A DNA stretch of 64,000 nt from Klebsormidium nitens (taxonomy: Eukaryota > Plantae > Klebsormidiophyceae): positions 186,001 through 250,000 of the forward strand of contig DF236984.1 in the NCBI GenBank assembly GCA_000708835.1, written 5' to 3'. The translations under genes and the position numbers were made by a program. Positions within the stretch are counted from its first letter, which is position 1, and each line of letters begins with the position of its first letter. Shown in pieces: positions 11,987-31,800 of this stretch. The notes beneath the pieces were generated by a model. The model worked only from the letters and a program-made list of their open reading frames with translations, searched no databases and had not been told where the DNA came from.

Positions 11987-13815
11987 CTGCAGTTATAAAA
12001 AGAAAAGAGAAAAAGGCTTCGATCACAAAATCTCAGGCCTACAGATTGTTTGGGAAATTCGAAACGGACATGTCTTCCGGCTTGACGTTTTTTTCGAACA
12101 AAAAATCCGTTGTAACGCGAGCTAGGAGTACTTCAAAGTTCCTCTGATACGACGTTGCAAATGAGAACAAGAAATCATCCATAGGAATGGTATTAAGCTA
12201 CCCGACAAGTGTTCTAACGGTGATTAGGAATCGTGTGCTGACCTTGATCTCGGCAGATTCCTTTCGAGCCAATGAGGAGGGCCTCTTCAAAGTGCATCTT
12301 TTAGAATAGCTTGAGCTCAGGACCATAATCTAGCTGGCTCTATATTCTACGCCGTACCGAACTCCACGACCTCCTTGTTGCATGAGAATAGGAACAGCCT
12401 TGAAGTGCACCACACGTATCCCAGAACATCAATGACTTATGCTCCCACAATGGATGCTGTTCAGACGTCCTTGTACCGTACCCCTTATAACGTGTGCCGT
12501 TATTCATGACGAACGCAAAAATAAAGAAAAGTTTCATAGAACAGTAGGCCAAAGTTTGAGATTTACCGCTCTTGTTCAGGAACCGCGTATGGATTACAAG
12601 GGATGTGCAGGCTGCGGCGTTTTCAGACTGACTCGCTCTTCTAACATCACGTACTTTGTGGTCAGCAAGCAGACTCAACGGACTCGTTTCACTTTGTTCC
12701 CTTGATGCCTGTGCCGAAGAAGCATCTGCACCGTCCTTTCCACTTTTTAGCTGCCAAGCGGATGCAATAATCCTGCACTCTGTTCTGAAGACAGAAATAG
12801 GTTTCTGACTCAAAGCTCCTGAAAGAATCTGTCTGCCCGAAAGACGCAGCATACTGTTTGGCATAATTCGGTTCTGAACAAAGAGATTCTTGTCTCGCCC
12901 GAAAGTCGACATGGAAGGAAGAAGGCAAGAAGGATGAGCTGTCACGAGACGTGAGCTCGTCATATTGCCAGCTACTGAGCCCTTGTGGATCTGCAAGCTG
13001 AGTCCCGTCTTGTGTCAAGGAAAGGGCGCTTTTGTCTAGCGCAGGTCGCTTGATGCTTCTGACTCTGAGATGAAGTGGAACTGGTCGCGTGACGTCCATA
13101 ATTACTGCGCGCGCGATCGCGGCCGTGACATTTGCGCGGGCGCGCGGCCGACCGCGTCGAACGCTGCCATTGCAACCAGGGCTCAAAAAGGGGCCGCGCA
13201 GCCAGACCGACGCGCTCCGCGCTTCTACATCCTGCTAAGAACGTATGTGTCCATTTCGCAAATGGAAAATACGTTGATCATCAACTCGACGATGCACTCA
13301 CGAGAGACTTCTGGCGACTCTAGATCTGCAGATTGAAAAGGGCAATCTGACCGGACCCGCGCTCCAGACCTAATCACAGCTATCACTAAACCAATCCCGC
13401 TTTCCATGTGTGGTAGTTCCGATCAATGTGGAAATTTCGTAGATCTTCACTGCATTGGCACACACTTTGGCACACTACATTTACTACACGGGTGCTCTGC
13501 AACAGTGCTTTCATCTCGTCCAAGGTGCAAGGATGACACCACATCTGATCCATGTGCGCCGCTCATGCATAGATATGATTTGCGTCTCATTTTTGCACAG
13601 TGTGCATCCCAATAAAGCTGCGGCCCGTCCGACCAAGCACCGGTACTCGCTTATCATCACGCGATAAGAATGTACAAATTGAAGGGAGATTCCTTCAGTG
13701 GCAGACCCCCAGAATACATCCGGTCGGTCGAGACGGTCACGGATAACAAAGCGCAGCGAGACGGAAGATGTTTGCAACTAACTGCTCCGGTAAACTCCTT
13801 AGATTGCCACTGTTT

Positions 13816-16800
13816 TTAAAGCACGAACAACCTTCTCTCCCGCAAATCCGTTTGGACAGCCGCATCGTACTCCTCTAACGCGTCTGTCACGGCCTCCTCA
13901 CGCACATAGACATTCTCCAAGCTGGGTTTGAGCTGATGCTCGTCTTTCAATCCGATTATCGCCGCGTCTCTAGCCGTTCCACTCGTCTTACATCCTCTTA
14001 GGTACGCAACATCATGCATAGGATCCAAAAGTTCGCACTCCCTGAGGAAGTCAGCCCCATGCAAGACCAAAAGTCGGACAGCGTCAAAACGGCGGTGGTA
14101 AGCCGCGAGGTGCAGCGGCGGAAACGCACCCTCGACGCTGCCATAAACTTCCGGCCCGCTAAAGCCCAACCGATTCGGGAATGGTCGTCTCGCCACGTGG
14201 ACGTTCGCGCCGCGCCTCAGCAGGGATCTCAACATGGACGTATCCTTACACGTGGCGGCGTATAAGATGGGCCACGAGGCGAGGGACGGGGATGGAAGTG
14301 AACGGCCAGACTCCTCGAAGATGTAGTGACAGTCTGGGTTCGCTCCTAAGTTTAGAAGCCACTCAACAACGAGGCAGTTTCCGGAGAAGACGGCGTATGT
14401 CAGAGGATTCTGTAGACCTTCCCCAGGCACTTCGGAGTAAAGTAAGTCTCGCTCTGGCCCCGGAGAAATGGAGACGAAACTTTCGAGGAAGCCCTCCGGA
14501 GTGGGTGTCTGCGCGAGACGCGCCAGAAAGCGCTGGACGGCCGGATGGTGCGCATCTAAATTGGCGAGGAAATGAAATATGCTTGCGCCGTCGAAGGGCG
14601 TGCCGCCGTACAACGGGTTTGGTCGCAGGGCGGGACACAGCTGCACGTGGCAGAGCAAACGCAGGATGAATGAAACCCTTCATTTCTGATGAAAGCTAGA
14701 AAAGAATCGTTCTGAATGCTACGGACCTTCAGTCGTCGGGTATTACCCGCAATAGTGCAAAGACCAGGATTTCTCTGCGCTCCGAATAAAGCTGGAGCCA
14801 CTTCGCTTGAAAAAGATGGTGCCACCAGCTAGACTGCAAACAAAACCCTTAAGTTACAGGCGGCGAAGGGAAGCATACACTGAAGACTGATCAACATCAC
14901 GCTTCACATTCCACAACAAAATCGGGTCGTTTTTATGATTGATGCTATCCTATGCGCTTACAAGGGAAGTGAAGGAAAGAGCTTGCCAAGCGCTTGACCG
15001 ACTAACGTGCACCCAACACAAGGAATTAGCAGTCAGTCTTCCTCGAAGCTCTAGCCCAACTTAGGAAGAACACTTACCTTTACTGAGAAGCTGCGTCCAG
15101 GTGCCACGTGTCATGCTGCAGTTGCGAGCTGAGCCACTCGAGCATCTCGTGGGCTTTGAACCACACCGCCAAAAAGAGGGGCGTCCTGCCGAAGGGATCC
15201 CTCATTGCGAGCTGCTCGCGGGGTAAGCTTTTGGCAAACCATACGCTATTGCTGGCGGCAGCGCCCAGCATGTTTGGGATCTGGCGGGCGACATGCAGGA
15301 TAATTGAGCCGGTTTCCAGGACGACGAGCCGTCCCGTTCGGTTCCGGCTATTCCCTGCGAAAGATCAACACTCTAGCGGTTGAGATTCTGGTACGTATCA
15401 TACTGACACTTAGACCGTGTGAGACTACAATAGAAAAGTTTGTTAGAAGCTAGCCATAACTGTTTCAGCCGTGTGGATCCCGAAGCTGCAACGGATGTTT
15501 TTAAAATAACAGAACGAAGAGTCTTGTGTATTGGAGTCTCAACGAATGATTGAATGAGGTTTCTACTGCGTCAAGCTCGTCGGAGATTCTAGACTTTCAT
15601 TCAGACCTCTGAACCAAAGTAGACAATTAGAGATCGATCAGACGAGTATCGTTATCTCGCTTAAACCACAGTTTGCAGCCAGGATTCTTTGCCTATACTC
15701 TTGAGGAGGATACTATTCTGCCGCTTGTTCTAATCTTTCGAATTCAAATTCGAAAACCCAAGTTTCTCGAAGTTTCAGAACAACAACGAGAGAGCTTTCC
15801 AACTGTCAGGGAAAGCAGCAAAACATAAAATTGCGGGTGTCGCTTTACCTTGGTACCACACCTCCCCTTCCAGCGTGATGCCCCAAGGCTTCAGTATATT
15901 GTCGGCAGTCCATTGGATCCAGAAAATAGCGTCATTGAAGTTGAAGTGCTCATCGGAGTTATATCCGCTGGGGATGCGGTACTCCCGCTCCATACCAAGT
16001 CCGTCCGGTGTTGGCACCCTTGAGAAGGTCCCTTTGTACCGCGGAAGGCCCCCTTCCGGATTTGAGCCGTACTGTTTTCATTCCAAGGATTCTTCACCAA
16101 GGCAAGTTTGCTGGTCTCTTCATGACCCCCCGGAGCCCAGCGACAATTCATGCGGATGCTCCGCTTTTGCAAAAACTCTGTCTGCAACACAGCGAGGTTG
16201 GTACTTGAGGATGTGGCTGCATACAGAGGTTTTGGGGCTTTACTTAAGTTTCTGGGATTGATGTGTCAGAGCTCTCCTCTCGTTTTGAGGCGTTGTTAGC
16301 AGAAAGGATGGAGATGAATCGTCCGTCAGATTGGATATTCTCACAGAAGCTAGAATTCAATCAACCGTGAATCAAGCAAGCTTCTCAACGCCTTCCAAGT
16401 CTGTGATTTTAGATATTGCTCTATTTTCGAAAGAATATAAGCAAACAATCAACTTTGCCGAACACACAACACCCGGAAAGGCAAAGAGGATTCACTGGTA
16501 CTTTCGGACTTCGAGACTCTGAAGAATCAACTCTTGAACAAACACCTTGATCCAAGCACCCGAGTCGATACTTCCTGCCTCGATTGTTTTTCACTATCAT
16601 TGAAAACGTTAGATTCGATCAGAAAATAGAGTCGATGCATAACCTCCAAAACTCTGCTGGTATTTTGAACAGCCTTGACAAACATCCAGTCATGATGGGG
16701 AATCTCACCTGTTTCTCAAGAGGAAGGTCGAGGAAGTCCCTCGAGCTCACCCAAAACTCGCCCTCAGCACCAAAGGGAAGTCCTACAAGCTCCCTGACAG

Positions 16801-16957
16801 GGTGCGCACAGTTCCTTGTTGCCCCTGAGTCCCGCTGTAACTGCTCATTTTGCCAAAAGAGCAGCAAGTGGAGGTACTGATTGTACTCGAGCCTCGTACC
16901 TCCGCAAAACTTGAAAGCACCCTGAAAGTTGTATGTAATACTCATGTTGCGATACAT
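13816..16957 (-). pseudogene. Cluster copy A: uncharacterised N-terminal domain plus ankyrin repeats, disrupted
   Basis: Exon 1 16957-16709, exon 2 ~16180-15850, exon 3 from 15354 to ~15078, exon 4 ~14645-13816. One-base deletion near 16020 relative to copies B and C; frameshift and stop at the end of exon 3 (DAASQ*); early TAA at 13816. Confidence 0.8.
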
Positions 16958-17771
16958 GGCGAAAGTAGATGTGCGGCTAGCTTTTCGACAAATGGTGAGG
17001 CGCGTTGAGGAGAACACGAACTTCAGGGCTTGCTTTGTGTGCACTCATACGCGCGGCCCGCCCGCTATTGATCAGCCAGGGTTCCAAGGTTTTGCCAGAT
17101 CGTTGTATAAACCTCTTTAGCCGGTCACGTGACGTCAGTTGCGACTTCAAGCCCTGGCGGCCGCGTGGGCGCGCGACCCGGCCGGAGGCGCCGCGCGACG
17201 AATTCTGAGCAGCTGGACAATCGCGCTCACCACAGAGCATCCATTATTGAAGTAAGGCGGCCTTGTCGCTTGTCTTGAGGCTTATGTTTTCCGTGATGTG
17301 ACGAGGTTGGTTGCAACTTGCAGATCGACTTCTCTACAAAGTGGGGGATCGACTGTCAATAGAGCTGACGTATGCACCGCAGACATGTAGAATGACCGAC
17401 CGTAGAACTCCGTTCTGATGTAATTGGCTAAACCTATCGTTTTAGTATTATTCCACTCTGATTCGGTCAATTTTCATGAGCAAATCTCAGTCACGGTCCT
17501 TACTACTGCTCAAATGAAGGGTCTGAGACACCTTGCGGTATTATGAATGCGTAAGCTGGGCGGACGTTCACAGCGTAATTTACCGTTAAACATCAATCAG
17601 GTAAAATTGGCTTATTATTTTCACACAACGCACGGTTATCACGTGAAGGATTGCAAAATCTCTTCGATTTCGTAAGATGAGGGAGCGCTTTTCCAAAGCC
17701 TGAAAAGCAAGGCAATCTTCTTTGTCACTTCGCAGAAAGTCAGTTGAGACAGTCAGTCGAGACGGTCAAGG

Positions 17772-20700
17772 TTAATCTAGAGCAGCTAAGTGGAATATTT
17801 TTGCAACTAAATGCTCCGGCAAACCATTCAGGTTGCAGTTCCTACTGAGACAGCAGAGCACAAGCAACTTTCTCTCTTTCAACCCTGCTTGGACAGCGGC
17901 ATCGTACTCTTCTACTGCGTCCGTGACAGCATTCTCGTGCAGAACGACATAGTTCTCACTTCTCTTCCGCACGTGCTCGATCTTGAGCCCCAATTCCACC
18001 GAGCTCTAGCCGTCCCTCCGTCGGTCAATCTCTTCCCATGACCGCGTATGTGCCTATCTCCCAAGTTGCACTCCTTGCGAACGTCAGCACCGTGAAAGAC
18101 CAAGACGCGAACATTGTCGTAGCGGCGGCGGTATGCCGCAAGATGCAGGGGCGTCATCGCTTCCGGCAGGATCCAATAAACTTCCGGCCCGCCTAGTCCC
18201 CACCAACCACGTGATTCACATGTTGGTCTTCTCGACACGTGGACGCTGGCGCCCCACTCAAGCAGCAACCGCAACATGGAGGTATCCTGACACGTGGCAG
18301 CATGTATGAGAGGCCACGAGGAAGGGGAGGGGAAGGGCTTCGAGCGCAAACTCGAGTCGATGTGATGGCAATCCGGGTCCGCGCCCAATTTCAGAAGCAA
18401 TTCAGCGACCAGGCGGTTTCCGGAGAAAACAGCATGTGTAAGCGGATTGTGGATGTCCTCATCAGCCGGTCCCATATGGTCTGGCTCCGTCTCTGGTTCA
18501 CCAGAGATTCTCGTGAAGCGTTCGAGCATGCCCACTGGCATAGGGGCCTGCGCAAGACGCGCCAGGAAGCGGGGAACCGCCGGATGGTACGCGTCTAGAG
18601 CGGGGAGAAAGTGGAACACGCTGGCGCCCTCAAAAATCCGAGGGAATTGGTCATAGGTAAAGGAATAGCACGGCTGCAAGGACAAAGGCAGAGTGTAATC
18701 AACTCACTTATGCTTGCGGAGCCGCCGGTTCTTATCAAGATTCTTTACTTGTAGGATCTGGCCGTTGAGCGCGATCTCCGCTGAGCCGCCTTTCCAACTT
18801 GCATGCCAAACTTTCAAGTTTGGCTTGAAAATATCTACCTTTCGGTGAAGGTGTCCACATGTATCTAGTCTCCGAGCAGCCGCAAATCTCAAGCTGCAGA
18901 GGTAGCGGTCATGCCCTGTCACCGATGTAGAATAGCCCTCTACTTGGTGATCGATTCGTATACGTAGGCCACTTTTCTGATTCTGAATGGATGCAAACCA
19001 CCGGAATCATAGTCCCTGTTCAAACCTGGAAACAGCAATCAGAAAACCACATACCTTTCTTGCGAAGACCGCATCCAGCTGCCAAGTGTCGTCCTGTAGC
19101 TGCGTGCTAAGCCAGTCGAGCATCTCGTGTGACTTGAACCAAGCCGCCAGCAGGAGGGGCGTCCTGCCAAAGGGATCCCTCATCACGAGCTGTTCGCCGG
19201 GCAAAGTTTTGGCCAGCGATACGCTATTGCTTGCAGCGGCACCCAGCATGTTTGGTATCTGGTTTCCACGCGCCGTTTGCTTCACTATGGATCCGGTTGT
19301 AAGTATGACGAGCCGACCCGTGCAAGTCTGGCTTTCTCCTGCAGTCGAAGATGCAAAGGGGGTTTCAACCTTGATGTATTTTAGATCATGGGATAAATTT
19401 CATCCGAAGAAACGCGCACTGAATCTACCGGTTCTTTTGTTCCCAGGTGACTGAGATTATGTTGATATCCAATAATGAATTGAATTTAACCTGAGCTGCA
19501 TGTCCCCTGAATGAATTAAAGGTTTCCGAAGTTTTATGCACAAAATAATCAGACCTGCACATGAAGTCGAAACTGACCTCTAAATGTGTGCAGCACTTGC
19601 AGCACTCAAACAAGCCGTTTCTATTTGGCCATTTCACAAATCAGCAGCTCTTGAAATACTAGATTCGACTGAGTATGATTCACAGCTGCCGGGGGCTGGA
19701 TCCCAGAAATCAAAGAGTGCTTGAAATCGTTCTTGGATCGTATGGGGCGCCCTTCAGCAAAAGGATAACTGAAATCCTGGCATTTCACCTTGATACCAGA
19801 CTTCCCCTTCCAACGTCAGGCCCCAGGGCCGCAGTATGTTGTCGGCTATCCACTGAATCCAGAACACGGCACCGTCGAAGCTGACTGAACGCTCGGGAAT
19901 TCCAGTGCGCCGATTATAGCACCACTCTATTCCACAGGCGTCCAGCGTAGGCACCCAGTGACACGGTTCCTTTCTGTCTCGAAACGCCGTGAGAAGCCGA
20001 AAAGTGTGAAAGTGTGATTCTCTTCCGTGCGGGTCGTTCTTTATCAGTCCTGTCTGGGACGTGTCCCAGCCGCCAAGATGGTCATGGTACTCGTTGCCAA
20101 ACCTCCTTGTTTGTAAGAACTGTGTCTGCGGCACACGTCAGCAAACGCGTTATAGGTTTTGCTCAAGAGGTCAGTGTCGGGTTGCGCTTCCGTAAAAGGA
20201 AACGCGCATCTGCCTTTCCAGATTAGCGCGGTCAGATTTGCGGGAGTCGGATGGGTTCACAGCACAATCCAAATGCCCTGCTGACGACCTTTCAAAGATG
20301 GTAGTTGTAAAAACCACCCGACAAACTGCTCCACCCGACGAAGATGGCCTCAGTTGAGGCAAGAATCTGAAGATCAAGCAGAATTTAGAAGCCAAGACAA
20401 AATAACCAGCCTCTTCCTTTCCCGCCGACACACCTAGTTGTTGCATTCTTATGATCTTTTCTGCCCTGATGACGTTTTTCCGATCATATGATCATGCATG
20501 TCCAAACTTGCTGGCCTCGCAAGATAAAAGGCTAGACTAACCCCAATTCTCTCATTGCAGTACCAATAATACGTATATACGTTCTGACCAATTGCAAAAT
20601 TGAGCAATATTTTAAATCTGAATCTGCAGGAATCTTTGTAATAACTTGGTCGAAGTTACAGGCTTCGACAATTTGCTTCCAGATTCAGAGGGCGTTCAAT

Positions 20701-21268
20701 CTTTGTAAAAGCTTAAGGCAAAGAGCTCTTAGGAGATAAAATATGTAACTGGTAAACGACCGCCTTCTTGCTAAGATGATCTGAAAACCTGCTAACAATG
20801 GAACCTGATTGTCTCTCCATGGCAGGCAGTAACCGTGCCTCCAATCCTCCAACGTCGATCTTTAATCCGTACACCACTTAAGATTATAATCTATCGTTCT
20901 TTGACCACCTGAACATCTATGAAATTGATAATATAATCTTGTAGGTGTCTCATTCTAGCTATTGGAGTTGCAGAATTGACAGTAAGGACACAAAAGCCAT
21001 GACCTTTCTTGTATCTTCTCACCTGCGTCTCGGTGGGAAGGTCAAGAAAGTCCTTTGAGCTCAGGAAGAACTCGCCTTTAGCACCAAGAGGAAGGCCGAC
21101 GAGCTCCCGGACAGGGTCAGGACATTCTTTTACTTCATCAATATTCCGCTGGCACCGCTCAATCTGCCAGAATAGCAATAGATAGCGGTACTGATGGTCA
21201 TTGAGCTTCTTGCCTCCAGAGAACCTAAAAGCGCCCTGGAAGGACATGGAGTTCCAATCGACGCCCAT
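17772..21268 (-). CDS. Cluster copy B: uncharacterised N-terminal domain, 4 ankyrin repeats and F-box-like tail; one frameshift near 18005
   Basis: Exons 21268-21023, 20125-19789, 19338-19055, 18673-17772 with consistent GT-AG phases. ANK motifs GRTPLLLAAW, NPLTHAVFSGN...LGADPD, PLIHAAT...WGASVH, TPLHLAAY...HGADV. The tail LPEHLVAKIF is in a shifted frame. Confidence 0.75.
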
Positions 21269-22044
21269 GGCGAAGCTGGATGTGCGTCTGACTTTCAGAT
21301 TGTCCGCTGAACAAACGCAGCGCTCAGTGAACACGATACTGCACTCAACCAGTGCGCGGCCAGCGCGATCGCATCGGTGAGTACTCAGGTTTCCAGGTTT
21401 TTGGCGGATTCGTTCCATCCAAGAGTCGCGTGATGGGTACCCGCGCACGCGGGCGCGCGGCCGACCGTCTCTGCCGGGTTGTCAACCACGGAGTCGCGGC
21501 CGCGCGCGCGACTAGCTCGGAGTTGGCGGCCGCGCAGCTACAGTACACGGTAGACTAAAACACGTGGCGTTTCGACAGAGCGGACGTCCTGTTCAAATCA
21601 TATTGACGCTTGTTGAAGGTAACGCATTCGAAACTTGCAGCATACAGAAACGAAGCATGATTTGGGGCGCCATCGAGGGACAATATGCAGCTTACGGCTA
21701 TGTCCGTGTCCCTTATGCGGCAACCGCTCTCGTGACAAGGAAGATAAACTTACAACCCCCAGATATTGTCGGGTGGCGCAAAGGATCAGGCCTTCAGACG
21801 GAACAGGGCTTTCCGTCTTCTTGAACTAATCTGCAGCCTAAAGGCCCTGAAGGCCAACGCACATAAGCACCCATACATTCTTGTAAATCATGTGGAACCT
21901 CCCAAAACCTGGAATCAAGCAGGATGCCCCAACCAAGCGAAAGGTGCACGGAAAAGATGTCCACTTAGGGAACGCGTTAAATGTATTGGAAACGTCGATG
22001 GAGTGCCTCGTATACCAGATCCTACTTCTGGTCCGTCGAGACGG

Positions 22045-25000
22045 TCAGGGACAATAGAGAGAAGCTAGGTTAAAGATCTTTGCAACCAAGTGTCCTGGTA
22101 GAATCTTCAAATCAATACTCCTTTGAAGGCAGCAGAGCACAAACGACCTCCGCTCTCTCAGGCCCGCTTGGACAGCGCCCCTCACATATGCCGTCTTCTC
22201 CGGAAACTGCCCGGTCGTTGAGTGGCATTTGACCCGAGGGGCGGACCCGGACTGCCGTTACATTTATCCGAACCCTGGTGGCTATGAGCCCTACCCGTCT
22301 CTTTCCTCGTGGCCCGTTTTGTACGCTGCCACGTGGAAGGACGCGTCCATGTTAAGGTGCCTGCTGGAGCACGGCGCAAGCGTCCACGTGGCGAGACGAC
22401 CGCTGATGGATCGGTGGGGTTTTGGCGGTCCTGAGGTGTACGACCGCGTCCCGAATGTCTTGACGCCGCTGCATCTGGCAGCTTACCACCGCCGCTACCA
22501 CGGCATCCGGCTGTTGGTCTTTTACGGGGCTGACTTCCGCAGGAAGTGCGACCTGGAGGAGCCTGGTTGCCGCGGGCGTTATATGGTTGAGTTTAACGCA
22601 AGTGGAACGGCTAGAGACGCGGTGATTACGGGACTCACAATCGAGCATGCGGTGAAATCAACCGCAACAACCGAGTGGCAGGACGACCATTTGCATGAGA
22701 ATGCTTTTACATACGCGCTGGAAGAGTATGGGGGTATGCAGAGCTTCCTCAGCCAGGTCAGTATTCTTAGAGATTCGTTCTGGCCCGCAGGGAAGCCGGA
22801 CGAAGCGTTCGAGGATGCCCACGGGGATGGCTGTCAGCGCGACACGCGCCAAGACACGGGGGACAGCCGGATGGTGCGCATCTAGACCGGCGAGAAGGTG
22901 GAAGACGTTGGCGCCGTCAAAAGCTGGGCCGCGGCGGCCGGACGTCTTAAGGCTCAGGACAGAGCACGGCTGCAAGGACAGAATAGAATTGCAGTTGGTC
23001 TCCGCTCACTGGATCCTCGACAATATTTGACTTCAAGATCCATGGCTCCTAGCACGATTTCCGATGGGCCGCCGCTTCTGAACTATCTTCAGTACGATCT
23101 TACACAAACTTAAGGTTGGTTTGGTTCTGTCCTCCGACCACGCAGATGTGCAGTATCGAGCCTGGGAATTAATGGCGAGCCACAGCTCAAGGTTGCAAAA
23201 GAAGTGCAAGCTGTAGTCTCCAACGCACGAAGAACTCCGAAGTCCAGCAATTGATGCATCTCCTTGGATGCACAACCTTGTTCACGTGTCCTTTCTGTGT
23301 CTACTCTGGACAATGCACATTGAACACCGCATACCTCTCTTGCAAAAAGCGCATCCAGCTGCCACGTGTCGTCCTGCAGCTGCGTGCTAAGCCAGTCAAG
23401 CATCTCGTGCGACTTGAACCAAGCGGCCAGCATCAGGGGCGTCCTGCCAAAGGGATCCCTCATCCCGAGCTGTTCGCGGGGCAGCGTCTTGGCCAGCCAT
23501 ACGCTGTTGCTAGCTGCGGCACCCAGCATATTAGTTATCCGGGGGCTGCCTGCCGGCTGCTTCACGATTGAGCCGTTTTCAAGCACGACGAGCCGACCCG
23601 TGCAGTTTTGGCTTCCTCTTGCATTCGAAAATGCAGAGGACTATTGGAGTTCTGTTGATTTTATCTTAGGGTGCACTGCCGTCCGAAGCTCGCAAACAGG
23701 ATTAGATCAATTGCAGTTTGTTTCCGCTTGGAGGAGCCGAATAGTGGCTGTCCATCGCGTGTGCATTTGTACCTGGAAAGACCCAGATCTACGGAGGAAC
23801 CCGTTTAAGGGGTGTTAGAAGTGACATAGGACGAAGAAGCATGATCTGCAAGTGGACCTAGATCTACAATTTGAAACTCATGCTACTTTAGATCAGACAG
23901 TCTGGTCCAATGCCTGCTTAGATGTATAACTCTTTGCTTGTCTTCATTTCAAAGATACTGAACATATAACCCGTCCCAGATGCTGGAGCTTGAAACTCAG
24001 AAACATGTAGAGCTGCAAAAGCTTCTACAGCAGACATGGAGAGAACAGGTTTCGGCTTCCCACCTTGATACCACACTTCCCCTTCCAACGTAAGGCCCCA
24101 GGGCTTGAGTATGTTGTCAGCAATCCACTGTATCCAGAACACTGCATCACCGAAGCTGACCGTACTTTTCAGGGTCCAGCGCCGGTTGTAAAACCACTCC
24201 ACTCCAAGGCCGTCTCGCGTAGGCACCCAATGACAAGGGTCCTTTCTGTCGCGAAACGCCTTTGGGTATTGAAAAGTGTAGTAGTCGGGTCGGTATTCGT
24301 ACGGGTAATTCTTGATGAGTCCTGCCGGAGACATAAACCAGCAGTCCATCTGGTCCCGGATCTCTTCCCCAAACCTCCGGGTTTGTAGAAACTGACTCTG
24401 CGACACACAGGAATTTCATGTTGTGTTTTTTGAACCTTTAGTATCTGCTTGCTGCCTTGAGGAAGTGCGTTGACTTGCTATTAAGTGAACACACCGATGA
24501 AACCACGGGACGGTTGCATAGGGTGGATCTTGATTCGAAAAGCCTAAGGGACATTTTCACAAGCACCGGGAGGCTTTCAAACGAAACCGCTTCCTTTGAC
24601 GAATTTGGCTTCTTTTGAGGTATGCATCCGGCAAGCAAGCTTTTGGGAGATGTTTCCACGCAACGCTGGTTTCTTTTTTTTCTGACAAAATCACGTTTGG
24701 GTTGGGTCCTAATTCTGCTTCGGTACCATCTGTTCATGTTTAGACTTGCATGCCCAGAAGCAAGTGTATTCATCAGAATATGGAGGAGTCCCTGTGGAGG
24801 TTGTTTGAACAAGCTCATCTCGGTCAGGTTGATTGCAAGAGCTACACAGGAATCTCCAAGTGAGCTTTCGAGAAAGTCACTGTGCTTACAAAGAACATTT
24901 ACTAAAGTCCGTATACTTCTGAAGAAGCTCCTCCTTGTTTTAAACAATGAAGAAGCAGCAGTCAGTCATCTTTGTTCAACAATCATTTTCCCTTTATGGA

Positions 25001-25452
25001 AAGCAGAGACGCACTATTCTGTAATGGGAGTAGCTATGCCTCCCACCTGGATCTCGATACCCACGGAATCATGTGCTTCGCTTCTTCTGGTTTTGAAAGC
25101 CAGATGAAACAGATTTCTACATGCCCAGCCCTGAAGCTGGGAAGTTGCTGATGGAATAGGGACATAACATGTTGAAATGTAAGCATGAAAGCATCCTGCA
25201 TCTTCTCACCTGCCCCTCTCGATGAAGATTAAGAAAGTCCTTGGAGCTGACAAAGAGCTCGCCCTCAGGACCAAGAGGAAGTCCAACAAGCTCCCGGATT
25301 GGATCAGGACAGTCTATTATCTTCTCAATGTCTCGCTGATACCGCTCAATCTGCCAGAAGAGCAGAAGATACAGATACTGATTGTCGTCAAGCTTCTTGC
25401 CTCCAGAAAATCTGAAAGCACCCTGGAAGGAGATAGCGTGATCCATGGCCAA
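22045..25452 (-). pseudogene. Cluster copy C: same gene with an internal inversion (~22178-22730) and a mutated exon 3 acceptor
   Basis: Exons 25452-25210 and 24397-24064 intact; exon 3 acceptor reads caa instead of cag (~23617); the central ankyrin part of exon 4 reads on the plus strand while its flanks read on the minus strand. Confidence 0.85.
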
Positions 25453-25724
25453 GCTGGTATGCGGCTGCTGATGTTCCGTGTTCAGTGTTCAGTGAAAAGT
25501 GGGTATCTGATTTTGCAGCTTGCTAAATCTCCAGCGGCGTCCAGCTGATCAAGCTTATGCGCGCGCGACCCCGCCAGCGGCCGCTTTGCGTCAGTCAGCC
25601 AGGGTTCAAGGGTTTGGGGGAGTCGTACTGATGTCATCAGTGCTCATCACCATACCCGGAACTTTGAGCGCGAGCGGTCCCGCGCAGCGCAAGGTGCGTG
25701 AGCGCCACACAGAGAGACGAAGAT

Positions 25725-25732
25725 TAGGGTTT
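25725..25732. promoter_or_regulatory. Telo-box (TAGGGTTT, reverse of AAACCCTA) in the divergent region between cluster copy C and DRC2
   Basis: Exact motif ~120 bp upstream of the DRC2 ATG; function not demonstrated. Confidence 0.4.
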
Positions 25733-25853
25733 GACGAGAGCAGAAGCTGAAGCCTAAGGAATGCAGGGCGCTCTGTAGCGAAGCCCAGGAGCGGGAGATA
25801 TCGCCCCTTGTTTCGACAATCCTTGAAAGCGGTGCACTAGCAGGATCGCAAGC

Positions 25854-28800
25854 ATGGCGAAGAAAGGAAAGAAGGACTCAAAGCCTTTAACGGAGGAGGA
25901 GAAACTGGTCAGGCAAGAAATGCTGGCTTTGCAAGCAGAGGAGGAGCGCAAGAAGCAGGAGGAAGATGCAAAGAAACGGCTCAAGGATAAGAAGGTAAGG
26001 GTCAGCACGACGTTGGAATTTGATGTATGTTTTGCGACCCTAGTGTCTACTATTATGAATGGAAATCAAGCGGTTTCTGACATGAGATTTCTGGCTGTAG
26101 TTTCAAAGCGAATGCGAGTGCATAGGTACAGTGTGGCCCTTGCAATTGGCCGAGCCAAACTGTCAGCATCTTCAGCAGCCAAACACTACACAAGTGATGA
26201 TGCTGGGCAAGGTCGCTGCCCTGCTGAATAGTGAGTACTTACAGTGAGCAAACTTCTCAGCGTAGCTCGCCGTGTGTAGTGTATACTGCTGCAGAACCTC
26301 TGCTTGTGCAGGGATGCTGATCTCTTCCTGTATTTGTCGCAACTTTCTGCCTCTACCTGTGGCACTCCTTGATTTTGCGCCTCGATTGGGGGATCTGAGA
26401 ATACATTGGCCGGAAAGCGGGGCATGTGGGAAAGTGGTTGAGGAAAAAGCGGAGTTTGCAAGCGTTCTGCAACTTTTGGCATTGCGGGGCAACACTGGAT
26501 TTCCCCTAATCTTCAGAGGTTGCTGGATGCAATGCACCCCAGCCCGTACTGCTATCTGAGCTCAGAGTTGCGCTCGTTCTGCAACCAGCAGACTCGTTCC
26601 TCTGCTTTGACCGACATCACATGTGGCATAACAGCAGATGTACTCGGCAGCTTGTGTGGCTTCCACGTGATGCAGGAAAAGGAAAAGAGTATCATGGAGA
26701 GTCCACATGCATTGGCCAAATCAGAATTGCCAATCAGCTTGGAGACAGTATGTCTACCAAATTCCAAACGTCTTTCTCGACAGAGACACTCAGTTTGAAC
26801 TGCTACCTGTGCACAGCTACTACAGGGAACAAAGGTGAAGCTAGCAGAGGCCAGCAGTCTGGTGACTGAGGCGCAGTCGCACCCAAGCCTTGACAAACTT
26901 ACCCAGCTGAAAATGTTTAGCCAATTACCCTGCTTCACACAGCATTTATTTGTGTCTTTGGACTTTCAATCTGTTCTTTGGGAGGAAGAGAAGTCTGCCT
27001 GCGTCATGTTCCGCCTGACTCGCACGTTGATGCGCATCGGATCTAAGAAAGATAATCTTGAACTTAGCTTTCAAGCCCCTGGTTTTGAAGTAAGGAAACC
27101 GGCATCTTATTTGCAGGCGACGAAGGAAAGATTATCCTCGCATTTAGGATGCCCCGTACGCAGTCTCGCAACCTCGTTATCCGGCAGGTCAGACTTATCT
27201 TTCCGACCTGACCGAAGATTCGAGCTCCCAGATTTCAAAACTCAACTTTCGACTCTCATTTGCAGGAGACGGAGGAGAAGTACGCCCGCATCAATGGCCT
27301 CAAGATCCACACGCAGTGGCGCAAGTTCATGCGGCAGGCCAAGGTGGACGAGCTGCGGCGCGACATCGAGATCCTGAGCCAGCAGCACGAGCGGGAGGTC
27401 GACCGCAAGGATGCCATCATTCAGATGCTGGACAAAGATCTGGACGATGGTGAGATCGTCTGGAACTCCCTATTTCTGCGACTATTTGGTTCTAGGCAGC
27501 TGGACATGCCTTACTCATCTTACATCCATTCTGGTGCTTTGGAGATTGTGCTAGCAGCACAATCGGGAGGTCGAACATAAGGATGCCATCATTCAGATGC
27601 TCGACAAAGATCTGGACGATGGTGAGAATGTCTTAAACTGGTTACATTTTGGGTCTATTGCGTGAGCCGAAATTAGATCGTTCGTTTGTGACCAATTTGG
27701 CTTCATGAGAAGATTTCTGGGGCAGCAGCATGAGGGGAAGGTCAACCGCAAGGACGCCCTCGTTCAGATGCTGGTCACTTTGGTGATGGTGCGCGTCAAG
27801 ATAATTGTATCTGTGATGCCCTTCCGATTGCATTGCCTCTTTGGCAGATGTTTTGAGCTGGCGTTGAAAGAGGAGCGGGCTCGGAAACGGCCGTCAATCA
27901 GATGTGAACGGAAATCTGATCAACAATGAGGCCGTTTGAAATCTGGTGTGTAATGAGCTCTCACGCCAATAGTTCCTTCTCTGACTTGATCAGCAGTTTC
28001 AGCGTAGCAGCACAAGTGTTATTTCACTGTTGGTATCGCATCGATTAAATGCCCAGGACAGGCACAAAGTACCCTGTTTCCTTCTAATATCACGCTTTAC
28101 GTTCTCTTGAATTTCGCGAGTCGGATTCACTCTGGCACGTTCGGAGGTTGAAAGATTGTATGCCATGCGCAGCTGAGAGCCAGCACCAGACGGCCCTACG
28201 CGCGCACCTCCAAACCGTGGACGCAATCATCGAGCTGCAGTATGAGCGGATCAAGGTCCGCGTTGTAACGCTCCTACTTCGTAAAGCGTTCTTATTACAC
28301 GATTCAACGTCCGCTTAGCAAGCTTGTGCACGTGATGGTGCTTCGCTTTCGTCCCACTGCGAATGTATGCTTTGAAAGACCATCGTAAGCTCCAGGAAGC
28401 TTGATCTCACAAGAGCAGCCACCGACTTGGTCACAATCACTGGCCCTTACGGGCCAATGGTGGCTTCAACATGCTGAAGCCCGCAGCGTTTAGCAGCTTC
28501 TCACAAGCTGACCAGAAGCCAAGCCATAGGGTCAAAGAAGCGAGCACGTTACTGGCAGTTCAAGGGGATCCGACCCGACTCAATCACAATAGAGTTATAG
28601 CCACCTCCACGATCTCACGTCAGCTGGCCGTTGTCAAGGGACCGCAAAGGTGGTATGGCGGGCAACTTCTCACCCTTTGCACTTGTATAAGGACGCGTTT
28701 TGTTTAATGTCGCCGTCCTTACGTGAATTCTGAGCGGTTCCTCGCTGGAATTTACTATGAAATCGTTCGGATGCAGGCGTTGGAAGCGGAGTTCCAAAAG

Positions 28801-31800
28801 GCCCTGCAAGCGCTCTCAGACGAGTTTGACAGCGAAAAGGCGGAGATCCAGAACAGCCACAACAAGCAGAAAAAGGTGCGCTTCAGGACGACTTGATCCA
28901 CAATTAGCCGCCCGCCGCTTGAAGCAGTGCCCAAAGAGATCAATTTTATCTCTGTTCTTAAGCAAGGCCAGAAGGCGTTTTCTCTCTGTGCAGCAGCCGT
29001 CAGGCAATGTAATACATACAGACCGCGCTGGAGGAGACTACTCTTTCTAAAAACCGTTGTCCTAATATTTCAGGCCTTGTTTCGCATCTCACGGCATTTT
29101 GATTCAATGACAACCAGTCCTTGCTGATTGCAAGTGGACCATTACGCCCCATGTCTGTCGTTCCCTCCACCTTCCGAAGTCCCATCTGCCTTTTGGACGG
29201 TCAAGTTGGTGGATTTGCTTGAGTATACCAATTTTTCCCTTCAACTTCTGGAATTACAGTCAACCGTCTGATTACTTCCACCTTCCAGAGTTCTGTCTTC
29301 CTTGGACGTTTAAAGTAGTGGACTTGCTAGTGGTGTCCGATCGTCCCTGCATCTCTTCGTAATCACAGTCAACCGTCCGATTACTCCGCAGGAACTGCTG
29401 GAGATGGCGGTGGCCATGGAGGCCGAGTTCGAGGAGGCGGAGGGCGAGGCGCGACAAGAGTTTGAATCTCAAAGAGAAGAGATCAAGGTAAATTGGACCT
29501 TCTAAAACACGCAAAGTGACGCACCAGCTCGTCTGTCAAGCTCACGCACTTATTCGACGCTACGGTGTGATCAAAAGCAAGACCTCAGCGTGCAAGGTAA
29601 AATGTGCGTGTATAGTGGACGTCGATTGGGGGCTGGAGAAGCGTTCATTGCCATCGAACTTGTTATGGCTGATAAGGTATATTTTCGACGACTTTGGTGC
29701 CGGCCTTCGTAGCTTGCAAAGGTGCCGAATGCCTTGAAATGTGAGCAGCTGATTAAATTTCTACCTTTTGAATTCCGTTTAGGGGAACAAGAGACAGCTT
29801 TCAGTCCTCTTTCTTGAGCTGTCAGCTCCAACGCAAATATTCGCGACCAGTGTCCCTGGACAAATGACGTGAGTTTTTTCGATCTGAGCTACGCTGCCAT
29901 CCTCGCTTTGCAGAATCGCAACTCGGAAGAGTACAACGTCCTGAAAATCAGCCTTGAGGGCGCAATCGAGGAGCTCGAGCGAGAATTCGAGCAAGCGCAC
30001 CAGGCGAGTTTGCAAATGTGCTTCTTTCCGCTGTTGGCTGATCGCTCCAATGATGCTGTCTTTGAAGCAGTATCATCAAACCGAACATATGTGCATGAAA
30101 AAGATGGTTTATTCGAGATCAACCCGTTTGGAGAGAAGATTGAGGACATGCGCACAGAAGGCGAAAGCAGTTCTGCGAAAAAATGGACGTCACTGATGGT
30201 TCGTCTAGCAATATTGTCTCGCGACCCGCCACACTTAGAAGAGATGTACCTGCGCCGATTGCGCTACCTTAGGGCCAAAGGCGCCGCCCAGTCCTTAAAG
30301 AAAGTGGAAGAAACGGGAACCACCGCTGACATTGAATCGGTATGCAGGCGTATCTGGACAGCACGGAGAGCCGCACGCAGTCGTTCAAGGAGCTGACGGC
30401 CAAGGACGCGTCGAGCGCTAAGATCATTGAGCAGCGCATGCGCAAGCTGATCCGGCTGCACGAGCAGATCGCGCAGTGGCGCACCAAGATGGCGACCAGC
30501 AGGTGCGCGAGCATTTCGCAAACGCGCATTCTCTGGTTTAGTAAGAAAACGTTTGCCCGAGAAGGCGAGTCGAGTCAAAGTAGCTTATGAGTGCCAAGCG
30601 ATTTGCGCAGTGGCCCACCGAGGTGGCAAACAGCTGGTAGGCGAGATTTTTTTTTATGGGCATCCTTGGGGTCATAAGGTTTGAGAGGAAACCGTTCGCT
30701 CGTGAACCAGGATTTAGAGTAGCTGTGAGTGCTGTGTATACCTGTCCCACGGCGACCGAGGGACTGACGGACCGCGGCTCTATTGCTGGAATTGGGTCTC
30801 ATCAGTCAATACAGAAGTTTTCCAGAGAATTTTCTGGCTGCCGTCAACGCGCAAGTCCTCTATTAACACTCATGTTACGTCCCGCTCAGCCTTTCCAAGA
30901 TGAGCTCTGAGCAGCTATTCGTGGCGCTTAATCCAAGAGTCTTCGAACGTTCCTTCCGAAACCCTGTGAAAAATTCCGTCCGTTCTGCTCCCTTGCAGTC
31001 GTGAGTGGGAGCAGCGGAACAAGGCGCTCAAGGACGAAAAGGACATGATGGTCAAACACTACCAGGTGAGTATTTCTGGGCTTGCTTCAGTTTGAGGTCT
31101 AAGGGTCTCGAGTGCTGGATTTCAAGGAATTTTTCGTTACGTCTCTTCCTCTTGTAACGTTTAGCCATTTGGCACAAAGAGAAATAGAGACCGCAATGCC
31201 GTGAATCAGAGTGATGAGACAGTCATGAACATGAGGGAAAAGGCGAGGAAGAGAGGCATGCTAAAGGATGCCATGTCGCCCCCTTACGAGCTGTTATTGA
31301 AGATGAACCGGACGCGGCAAGCAAACCACCGCTGGTCTTACAGGTCCAATCTCCTCGGACAAAGAGCCCAACACTTTGTGAAGAGGCGTAGAACGTCAAG
31401 AATGATAGCGAGGAAGACATGATCGTTGCTGATGATGACATGCGTCATCACTGCAGAGGCTGAGGTCAAAGTTGAACCGCGGCGCAGCGAACTACAATTG
31501 GTTTCATTGAGCACTTTTTTTTCCACAGAAACCAACAGCTGACAGACAGCCCAATGGACGAAGAGCGATAGCTGAGAGGGGAGTGATCGTTTCTGAGAGT
31601 GCCACGTGTCACTATCGCAGGAGCTCAAGTCGAAGATGAACCGGATGCGGCAGGCGGAGCACGAGCGGCTGAAGCAGCTGTCGCTGTACAGCGGGGAGGC
31701 GATCAAGGAGCTGGAGCGGAAACTGGAGCAGGCGGAACGGATACTCAAGCTAGCGGAACTCAACCGAAAGGTGGGCATATACACTCTGCTGCATCAATAG

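What the first reader, a model, noticed from the sequence alone, without database searches (positions are those of the whole stretch)
13816..25452. Triplicated gene fusing an uncharacterised phage/giant-virus-like domain to ankyrin repeats and a C-terminal F-box-like tail
Seen: exons 1-3 encode a ~210 aa domain, FQGAFRFSGGKKL...YLLLFWQ.ER.QR...PDP.RELVGLPLG..GEFF...PCHWVPT.DG.G.EW...F..AVFWIQWIADNILKPWGLTLEGEVWYQGE...GRLVV, conserved in all three copies. Four ANK repeats follow, then LCCLSR...LPEHLVAKIF. Recall, unverified: the domain matches a family of hypothetical proteins of large phages, bacteria and giant viruses (MGYxTxFxG...DPxRxAVGLPxGxEG...CQWVP...IEW...WLxYL...FLxPWGYxLxGxVxWQGE). 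Known: ANK plus C-terminal F-box is the poxviral ANK-PRANC layout. Inference: a captured, intronised viral or microbial domain serves as sensor or decoy on a ubiquitin-ligase adaptor, evolving by birth and death. Best candidate here for an undescribed system.
Basis: partly seen in the sequence, partly recalled or inferred. Interest (0 to 1): 0.8.

Follow-up and report, generated by a model that had tools for sequence, protein, structure and literature searches.

The report
Algal ankyrin genes with phage-type head
Three old tandem copies of a Klebsormidium nitens (green alga) gene join a domain otherwise found in bacteria, phages and giant viruses to ankyrin repeats and a short conserved tail; the family is real and undescribed, its function is unknown, the proposed F-box tail is not supported, and no copy reads intact in this assembly.

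Summary
The window is Klebsormidium nitens scaffold DF236984.1, and it is not human. Three diverged tandem paralogues lie on the minus strand between 13737 and 25446.

- **Architecture.** Each copy encodes a head domain of about 215 aa split by two introns, then four to five ankyrin repeats, then a conserved C-terminal tail of about 55 aa.
- **Head domain.** A profile of exon 2 finds small proteins that fall in PHROG 38666 (function unknown). Relatives occur in at least 101 bacterial or archaeal species genomes, at least 113 viral contigs, a giant-virus MAG and Tupanvirus. It has no Pfam family and no PDB fold match.
- **Wider distribution.** The same three-part architecture occurs in Trebouxia, a chlorophyte.
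- **Tail.** It matches no F-box, PRANC or SOCS-box model and no solved structure. It is predicted as two helices.
- **State of the copies.** As assembled, none is intact. A has two frame changes, B has one, and C has one inversion plus one non-canonical donor. Orthologue dN/dS is 0.14-0.31 for head and tail and 0.35-0.62 for the ankyrin exon. The lesions are therefore recent, or are 454/Newbler assembly errors.

Best reading: a horizontally acquired prokaryote/phage domain built into an ankyrin adaptor of unknown function. The ubiquitin-ligase idea stays unproven.

The parts
13737..16957 (-). Copy A, whole gene from start codon to the stop after the tail. Broken as assembled: two frame changes, no in-frame stop, no inversion. 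The deposited 699-aa model runs on into a downstream DnaJ-domain gene.
17772..21268 (-). Copy B, whole gene. Broken as assembled: one frame change. The deposited 542-aa model ends early and lacks the tail.
22045..25446 (-). Copy C, whole gene. Broken as assembled: one internal inversion of about 0.55 kb and one non-canonical splice donor. It is annotated as two fragments: 164 aa on this strand and 247 aa on the opposite strand.
21023..21268 (-). Copy B exon 1 (82 codons, phase 0, followed by GTGAGA). It encodes the first strand and helix of the head domain plus the long-form insert.
19789..20125 (-). Copy B exon 2 (337 nt). It encodes the conserved core of the head domain.
19055..19338 (-). 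Copy B exon 3 (284 nt). It encodes the last strands of the head domain (to about 19270) and the first ankyrin repeat.
17772..18673 (-). Copy B exon 4, first base to last. It encodes one degenerate and three canonical ankyrin repeats, a linker and the tail.
17775..17954 (-). Copy B conserved C-terminal tail (last 60 codons). In the relative P0006 it is predicted as a long helix followed by a short helix.
25854..34349 (+). Neighbouring gene with NYD-SP28 and NYD-SP28_assoc domains (a DRC1-like axonemal protein). It lies head to head with copy C, about 400 bp apart, and continues beyond 34349. The same neighbour is present in L001.

Best explanation
The region holds three old tandem paralogues of a nuclear gene family of terrestrial green algae. 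Each gene has three modules.

1. An N-terminal alpha/beta head of about 215 aa. It belongs to a large, unnamed family of small proteins of bacteria (notably filamentous cyanobacteria), a few archaea, phages (PHROG 38666) and giant viruses.
2. Four to five ankyrin repeats.
3. A conserved C-terminal tail of about 55 aa, predicted as two helices.

Shown:
- The homology of the head.
- The shared architecture in Klebsormidium-type and Trebouxia-type algae.
- Introns inside the head in the Klebsormidium lineage.
- Long-term purifying selection on head and tail, with faster change in the ankyrin exon.
- Lesions in all three copies of this assembly.

Inferred:
- A green alga took the head from a bacterium or phage, and it became fused to ankyrin repeats plus the tail.
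- The protein works as a modular adaptor. The variable ankyrin repeats would pick a protein partner. The two constant ends would supply a ligand-binding function (head) and a docking or oligomerisation function (tail).
- My best guess for the head's ligand is DNA or a nucleotide. The reasons are that phage members sit in replication and recombination modules, and that single members are fused to LigA-type BRCT, to a Fis-type HTH and to an Acb2/Tad1 hairpin.
- The tail is not a recognisable F-box or SOCS box.
For: Identity of the locus:
- K. nitens scaffold DF236984.1.

Head homology:
- The exon-2 profile gave 87 hits at E<=1e-3 among 1.84 billion representatives.
- Ten of ten tested hits fall in phrog_38666, with E down to 5e-24.
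- The phage-type proteins P0022 and P0028 hit exon 1 and exon 2, in order, in all three copies.
- Exon 1 is 35-42% identical to 237-254-aa cyanobacterial proteins.
- Nine of nine near-invariant core positions are kept in copy C. In copy B, eight of the eight positions that the exon-2 query covers are kept once an alignment shift at one position is allowed for.

Distribution:
- 101 confirmed loci in GTDB species genomes and 113 in IMG/VR, including contigs of 300-600 kb and one GVMAG.
- Tupanvirus structural match at E 1.9e-7.
- P0022 lies in a 72-kb phage-like contig.

Structure of the head:
- AlphaFold pLDDT is above 93 over residues 1-160 of P0022.
- There is no PDB match by fold or by sequence.

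Architecture in other algae:
- L001, L002 and L170.
- L005/P0036/P0094, and Trebouxia sp. C0004 P0107 on a 1.4-Mb nuclear contig beside DNMT1.

Selection, window versus L001 orthologues:
- dN/dS is 0.15-0.27 for head exons 1-2, 0.15-0.31 for exon 3, 0.35-0.62 for the ankyrin exon and 0.14-0.20 for the tail.
- dS is mostly 0.3-1.0 (1.6 for copy B's tail).

Context and fusions in microbes:
-.
Against: - No function is known for any member of the head family. PADLOC, Pfam, NCBIfam and the PDB give nothing for it.
- The DNA/nucleotide guess rests on three single fusions and on gene neighbourhood in one group of about 18 related phage contigs. In about 30 cyanobacterial genomes the neighbours are unrelated housekeeping genes.
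- No phylogeny was made, so the donor and the direction of transfer are inferred from distribution alone.
- The structure was predicted for a phage relative and for a relative's last exon, not for the spliced algal protein.
- All three copies here are interrupted, so in this strain the genes may do nothing at all.
- The model of the tail has only moderate confidence: pLDDT is 58-87 over residues 241-320 and 32 for the last residue.
Confidence: 0.6

Rival explanations
1. The protein is a substrate adaptor of a cullin-RING ubiquitin ligase. The C-terminal tail would be a truncated F-box (as in poxviral ANK/PRANC proteins) or a SOCS box (as in ASB proteins) that docks SKP1 or Elongin BC. The captured head would act as sensor or decoy.
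For: - The layout, ankyrin repeats followed by a short conserved C-terminal helical motif, resembles the ANK/PRANC and ASB layouts (established knowledge of those families).
- The tail is under purifying selection, with dN/dS 0.14-0.20, and is conserved from Klebsormidium to Trebouxia.
- Ankyrin-type ligase receptors (FEM1B/C, ASB8) are among the Foldseek hits. They score no better than gankyrin or DARPins.
Against: - There is no Pfam F-box, F-box-like, PRANC or SOCS_box hit at E<=10 in about 17 sequences.
- The tail profile against all PDB sequences returns only chance-level dodecin hits.
- The predicted tail is two helices.
- Only 13-16 residues follow the LP, which is too few for the three helices of an F-box.
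- The LP is replaced in several Trebouxia-type members.
- The head is the most conserved part, which is not what a decoy under an arms race would show.
Confidence: 0.15
2. The head is not a recent horizontal acquisition. It would be an old cyanobacterial gene that came in with the plastid ancestor (endosymbiotic transfer), or an ancient green-lineage gene, kept in a few terrestrial algae and lost elsewhere.
For: - The best exon-1 matches are proteins of filamentous cyanobacteria: Coleofasciculus, Leptolyngbya and Microcoleus.
- The full three-part architecture is present in both a streptophyte (Klebsormidium) and a chlorophyte (Trebouxia).
- The gene lies in ordinary nuclear surroundings.
Against: - Among the 87 hits of the whole-library search, only about nine look eukaryotic, and all are Klebsormidium-like or Trebouxia-like. 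No land plant or other alga appeared.
- Distribution within prokaryotes and phages is broad, not limited to cyanobacteria.
- The search profile came from exon 2 of Klebsormidium only, so distant eukaryotic members could have been missed.
Confidence: 0.15
3. The array in this strain is a set of three dead genes: relics of a family that is functional in relatives only.
For: - Every copy is interrupted as assembled. A has two frame changes, B has one, and C has one inversion plus one non-canonical donor.
- The deposited gene models are truncated, fused or fragmented.
- One copy in the relative L001 carries an in-frame stop.
Against: - dN/dS is well below 1 in every exon. That includes the tail of B, which is out of frame as assembled.
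- The assembly was made from 454 and Illumina reads with Newbler (PMC4052687). The frame changes lie near homopolymers of 4-5 bases, so some may be assembly errors.
Confidence: 0.3
4. Artefact: bacterial or phage contamination, or a chimeric assembly, that mimics a eukaryotic gene.
For: The head is otherwise prokaryotic or viral.
Against: - GT-AG introns interrupt the head at positions shared by K. nitens, L001 and L002.
- The array is syntenic in two independent assemblies, beside the same axonemal gene.
- The scaffold is 318 kb of ordinary algal DNA.
- The Trebouxia homologue lies on a 1.4-Mb contig next to DNMT1.
Confidence: 0.01

Closest known systems
PHROG 38666 (phage protein family, function unknown) and its bacterial and archaeal homologues
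   Same: The head domain is homologous over its whole length. Both exon-encoded halves match in order, and the near-invariant core residues are kept.
   Different: - The microbial members are stand-alone proteins of 120-250 aa that begin at the first residue of the domain.
- The algal genes carry introns, a short N-terminal extension, ankyrin repeats and a tail.
- The algal exon pieces on their own do not reach the PHROG model at E<=1.
Tupanvirus soda lake uncharacterised protein A0A6N1NUV7 (BFVD model)
   Same: It is the best structural match to the head-family model: E 1.9e-7, probability 1.0, 24% identity over 159 columns.
   Different: It is a giant virus of amoebae, with no ankyrin fusion known from this result. 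It was compared with the phage relative P0022, not with the algal protein.
Poxviral ANK/PRANC (F-box-like) proteins
   Same: The general layout: ankyrin repeats followed by a short conserved C-terminal motif (established knowledge).
   Different: - The Pfam PRANC and F-box models do not match.
- The algal proteins have an extra N-terminal head.
ASB family (ankyrin repeat and SOCS box proteins)
   Same: Ankyrin repeats with a C-terminal helical motif of about 40-55 aa. ASB8 appears among the Foldseek hits at rank 38.
   Different: The Pfam SOCS_box model does not match. The tail profile finds no SOCS-box chain in the PDB. The ASB8 hit scores no better than generic ankyrin proteins.
Pfam DUF6205, and DUF1281_C (the Api92/YubB ferredoxin-like domain)
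   Same: - DUF6205 is weakly hit by 5 of 76 head-family members, best E 9e-4.
- YubB-like phage proteins and api92 (2ijr) appear as weak fold hits.
- A DUF1281_C gene is the downstream neighbour of the head gene in about 18 phage contigs.
   Different: All these hits are below the curated cut-offs. A profile-profile comparison of the head family with the DUF1281_C neighbours gave probability 0.8%.

Membership tests
Head-domain family (PHROG 38666 type) | Significant sequence-profile relationship to family members | tested here: met
   The exon-2 profile finds members at E 1e-9 to 1e-3 against 1.84 billion proteins. Those members hit phrog_38666 at E down to 5e-24. The direct scan of algal exons against the PHROG model was blank, so the link is transitive.
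Head-domain family (PHROG 38666 type) | Both halves of the domain present and collinear | tested here: met
   P0022 residues 1-68 match exon 1 and residues 87-137 match exon 2 in all three copies. See also alignment A8.
Head-domain family (PHROG 38666 type) | Near-invariant core residues retained | tested here: met
   Nine of nine positions covered by exon 2 are kept in copy C. In copy B the query stops one codon short of the ninth position. Seven of the eight covered positions are kept, and the eighth is an alignment shift that resolves. All six positions covered by copy A's in-frame part are kept.
Ankyrin repeat proteins | Pfam Ank/Ank_2/Ank_3 matches above the curated cut-off | tested here: met
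   Exon 4 of A and B scores 50-54 bits against cut-offs of 21-22 bits. The repeat in exon 3 is weaker. Relatives were also tested.
F-box | Match to the Pfam F-box or F-box-like models | tested here: not met
   No hit at E<=10 in the window tails, L001, L002, P0004-7 or P0093-P0105. HMMER's filters can drop very weak hits.
F-box | Three-helix module of about 40-50 aa starting at the LP motif | tested here: not met
   Only 13-16 residues follow the LP. AlphaFold gives one long helix before it and one short helix after it.
F-box | Binding to SKP1 | not testable with these tools
   No complex prediction or interaction data are available here.
PRANC (poxviral ANK C-terminal domain) | Match to Pfam PRANC | tested here: not met
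No hit at E<=10.
SOCS box (ASB type) | Match to Pfam SOCS_box, or sequence similarity to solved SOCS-box chains | tested here: not met
   No Pfam hit. The tail profile against PDB sequences gives only dodecin at E 0.05.
SOCS box (ASB type) | BC-box and Cul-box motifs; binding to Elongin BC | tested here: inconclusive
   A leucine-rich helix followed by an LP-containing helix can be read that way by eye. However, the key positions vary between Klebsormidium-type and Trebouxia-type tails. Binding is not testable here.

The most novel reading that the evidence does not exclude
The head is a phage-derived ligand-binding module. One phage member is fused to the Acb2/Tad1 hairpin of anti-defence nucleotide sponges. 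Terrestrial green algae would have domesticated it as the constant end of a rapidly diversifying ankyrin adaptor family used in antiviral or symbiosis-related signalling. That would make it a eukaryotic immune-type gene family built from a phage counter-defence domain.
Probability: 0.08. Interest if true: 0.8.

Novelty: new variant of a known kind. Interest (0 to 1): 0.5.

Why it matters
- **An unnamed, widespread domain family.** It has hundreds of members in bacteria, phages and giant viruses, a confidently predicted fold, no Pfam entry and no PDB counterpart.
- **A clear case of domain capture.** The domain is built into intron-bearing nuclear genes of two distant lineages of terrestrial green algae.
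- **A handle for experiments.** The algal fusion to ankyrin repeats gives an independent way into the function of the microbial family.
- **A natural series for studying gene birth and death.** The tandem, partly decayed array is one such series.
- **A correction.** The attractive ubiquitin-ligase reading is at present only a resemblance in layout.

Tried and rejected
- **Direct family scans of the algal exons.** Pfam, PHROGs and NCBIfam on the head exons and the tail were blank apart from ankyrin.
- **PADLOC.** It gave nothing for the head.
- **Solved structures for the head family.** The PDB sequence search with the head profile and Foldseek against the PDB found nothing.
- **GenBank phage records.** tblastn of P0018 found no match.
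- **Link to DUF1281_C/YubB.** Profile-profile probability was 0.8%.
- **DUF6205.** Only weak hits, in 5 of 76 members.
- **F-box, PRANC and SOCS tests of the tail.** All negative. Foldseek with the ANK-plus-tail model returned only generic ankyrin proteins.
- **P0011.** This 1259-aa hit with 12 matched stretches is a tryptophan-rich repeat with spurious Pfam hits and is not a relative.
- **The search for related loci with the 76-sequence alignment.** It failed for lack of conserved stretches and worked with 10 sequences.
- **C-terminal extensions of microbial members.** Local clustering was uninformative, because the profile envelope ran to the protein ends.
- **Inverted repeats at the inversion in copy C.** None flanks it.
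- **Literature.** There is nothing on DUF6205 or on this family, and the run accessions could not be tied to organisms.
- **Phylogeny.** I did not build a tree. Only about 53 columns are shared by all sequences when the exons are kept apart.
Full report
**Origin and rules followed**

The window is from the charophyte green alga Klebsormidium nitens. The exon-2 ORF of copy C is 99% identical to 'hypothetical protein KFL_000350240 [Klebsormidium nitens]'. That protein lies on scaffold DF236984.1 of assembly GCA_000708835.1. It is not human DNA.

I searched the spliced model exon by exon, by reference. I sent no joined (spliced) protein to any search or fold tool, so that step is left out. I predicted structures for relatives that the searches returned. 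I did not fetch or compare any poxvirus sequence. PRANC membership was tested only through Pfam's model.

**The observation**

Three collinear copies lie on the minus strand:

| Copy | Window coordinates |
|---|---|
| A | 13737-16957 |
| B | 17772-21268 |
| C | 22045-25446 |

- Exons are 67-84% identical at the DNA level, and introns no longer align.
- No further copy exists elsewhere in the window.
- For copy B I read four exons with GT-AG borders: 21268-21023, 20125-19789, 19338-19055 and 18673 onward.
- As assembled, those exons sum to 542 codons. This is the length of the deposited gene model at that place.
- The head domain takes exon 1 (82 codons), exon 2 (112 codons) and about 22 codons of exon 3.
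- Pfam finds one ankyrin repeat in exon 3 and three in exon 4. The AlphaFold model of a relative suggests one more degenerate repeat at the start of exon 4.

**State of the three copies (counts only)**

As assembled, none can be read from start codon to tail in one spliced frame:

| Copy | Lesions |
|---|---|
| A | two frame changes |
| B | one frame change |
| C | one internal inversion of about 0.55 kb and one non-canonical splice donor |

- There are no in-frame stops in the coding parts.
- The deposited annotation reflects the lesions. B is a 542-aa model that stops early and lacks the tail. A is a 699-aa model fused to a downstream DnaJ-domain gene. C is split into a 164-aa model and a 247-aa model on the opposite strand.
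- The genome was assembled from 454 and Illumina reads with Newbler (PMC4052687). The frame changes lie near homopolymers of 4-5 bases. Some may therefore be assembly errors.
- No inverted repeats flank the inversion.

**Relatives in other algae**

- **L001.** This Logan contig (SRR23617307, 39.5 kb) carries the same three-copy array beside the same NYD-SP28 gene.
  - Best-match patterns give one-to-one orthology: A-A', B-B', C-C'. The triplication therefore predates the split of the two taxa.
  - The last exons of all three of its copies are single intact ORFs ending in the tail: P0005, P0006 and P0007.
  - One of its copies has an in-frame stop elsewhere.
- **L002/L003 and L170/L171.** A more distant organism has at least two members with the same exon pattern and an intact last exon.
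- **Trebouxia-type members.** A word search with a profile of last exons found P0093-P0105 and 'hypothetical protein WJX77_012135 [Trebouxia sp. C0004]' (P0107).
  - P0107 lies on a 1.4-Mb nuclear contig next to a DNMT1-type gene.
  - These members have the same order of head, ankyrin repeats and tail.
  - In them the head is readable in a single frame without introns.

**The head domain**

Family scans of the algal exons were blank. The word search found only Klebsormidium-like fragments. I therefore used the one whole-library search, with a profile of exon 2.

- It gave 87 hits at E<=1e-3.
- Apart from about nine alga-like fragments and one spurious repeat protein, the hits are proteins of 120-250 aa. 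The sequences read begin with the domain.
- Ten of ten tested fall in phrog_38666, function unknown, with E down to 5e-24.
- Longer members also carry the insert that exon 1 encodes.
- The phage-type proteins P0022 and P0028 hit exon 1 and exon 2 of all three copies directly.
- Against 218 family ORFs, exon 1 alone hits 69-80 at E<=1e-3 and exon 2 alone hits 167-185. The best exon-1 matches are 237-254-aa proteins of Coleofasciculus, Leptolyngbya and Microcoleus, at 35-42% identity.
- Near-invariant core positions are kept in the algal copies.
- Pattern scans confirmed 101 loci in species-representative bacterial and archaeal genomes. The taxa include many filamentous cyanobacteria, planctomycetes, Armatimonadota, Acidobacteria, Saccharibacteria, actinomycetes, Lachnospiraceae and two archaea.
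- They also confirmed 113 loci in IMG/VR, including contigs of 300-600 kb and one giant-virus MAG.
- P0022 sits in a 72-kb phage-like contig among helicase, ThyX, dNMP kinase and dCTP deaminase genes.

**Structure and functional hints for the head**

- AlphaFold models P0022 with pLDDT above 93 over residues 1-160.
- The order of elements is strand, helix, insert, two strands, helix, three strands. That is the order of a ferredoxin-like alpha+beta fold, but I could not check the three-dimensional topology.
- Foldseek finds no PDB counterpart; the best E is 0.42. The family profile finds no solved relative.
- In BFVD the one strong match is an uncharacterised Tupanvirus protein, at E 1.9e-7.
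- Weak hints to YubB/Api92-type ferredoxin-like domains did not survive a profile-profile test.
- In about 18 related phage contigs the gene sits next to a DUF1281_C gene, a Sak annealing protein and a PDDEXK nuclease. In about 30 cyanobacterial genomes the neighbours are unrelated housekeeping genes.
- Single members are fused to a LigA-like BRCT end, a Fis-type HTH, or an Acb2/Tad1 hairpin domain.
- PADLOC gives nothing for the head.
- These hints point loosely to DNA or nucleotide biology. No function is shown.

**The tail**

- It is conserved from Klebsormidium to Trebouxia, with five invariant and two near-invariant positions in 16 sequences.
- It is under purifying selection.
- It matches no F-box, F-box-like, PRANC or SOCS_box model at E<=10 in about 17 sequences.
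- A tail profile finds only chance-level hits among all PDB sequences.
- In the AlphaFold model of P0006 it forms one long helix and one short terminal helix. pLDDT over residues 241-320 is 58-87.
- Foldseek with that model returns generic ankyrin proteins only.
- Too few residues follow the LP for an F-box, and the LP is not conserved in several Trebouxia-type tails.
- The ubiquitin-ligase reading therefore remains a resemblance of layout.

**Selection**

Each exon was compared separately between the window and its L001 orthologue:

| Segment | dN/dS |
|---|---|
| Head exons 1 and 2 | 0.15-0.27 |
| Exon 3 | 0.15-0.31 |
| Ankyrin exon 4 | 0.35-0.62 |
| Tail | 0.14-0.20 |

- dS is mostly 0.3-1.0 (1.6 for copy B's tail).
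- The tail of copy B, out of frame as assembled, still shows dN/dS of 0.14.
- The family has thus been under constraint for most of its history. The lesions are recent or artefactual.
- The ankyrin part is the variable module. The head and tail are the constant ones.

**Conclusion**

The finding is real and the microbial/viral affinity is confirmed. The best-supported account is a horizontally acquired prokaryote/phage domain fused to ankyrin repeats and a novel tail in terrestrial green algae. It probably acts as a modular adaptor of unknown function. The structural and evolutionary part has a confidence of about 0.85. The functional guess has about 0.2.

1. None went to a tool, a note or this report.
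2. Before I settled on the count-only rule I worked out, in my reasoning, roughly where the frame changes lie. An earlier count gave coordinates of the inverted stretch of copy C. Entry 4 names the exon of each frame change.

No repaired, joined or consensus sequence was built or saved.

Noticed in passing
window 37961-38046 (-): A C/D-box snoRNA matches Rfam SNORD24 at 64 bits, above the gathering score of 41.
   Followed up: no
window 25446-25854: Copy C and the NYD-SP28 (DRC1-like) gene are head to head about 400 bp apart. This looks like a shared bidirectional promoter region, and the arrangement is conserved in L001.
   Followed up: partly
window below 13737 (-), downstream of copy A: The deposited 699-aa model of copy A continues into a DnaJ-domain gene. 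The two ORFs I tested at 12343-13186 carry no Pfam domain, so the DnaJ part lies further on.
   Followed up: partly
L117:5680-6483: In a 138-kb IMG/VR contig, the head domain is fused to an Acb2/Tad1 hairpin domain (PF24729, E 3.2e-9, above the cut-off). That domain is known from phage anti-defence nucleotide sponges. It is a single case.
   Followed up: partly
P0064 and P0067 (metagenome proteins): In one protein the head domain is fused to a BRCT-containing C-terminal part that resembles that of an NAD-dependent DNA ligase. In another it is fused to a Fis-type HTH.
   Followed up: no
L132-L164 (about 18 related IMG/VR contigs), e.g. L158:2195-2794 and L142:5714-7067: The head gene is followed by a DUF1281_C (Api92/YubB-like) gene. 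A Sak single-strand annealing protein and a PDDEXK nuclease lie close by downstream. Together these form a phage recombination module.
   Followed up: partly
L015-L055 (about 30 Microcoleus-type cyanobacterial genomes): The long form of the head protein sits at a conserved chromosomal place beside VTT/DedA, STAS, Uma2 and aldolase genes, with no obvious prophage. These are soil-crust cyanobacteria that share habitats with Klebsormidium.
   Followed up: no
L001, copy B' (about 12600-16250): One in-frame stop lies in an otherwise conserved exon of the relative's middle copy, while its last exon is intact.
   Followed up: partly
L166:6001-7498 (Trebouxia sp. C0004): The deposited 381-aa model P0107 appears to splice out part of the head domain, although the DNA aligns to P0036 in one frame across it. 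This is probably a mis-annotation.
   Followed up: no
P0011 (1259 aa, whole-library hit): A tryptophan-rich repeat protein matched the profile in 12 stretches and gives odd Pfam hits. It is judged spurious.
   Followed up: yes
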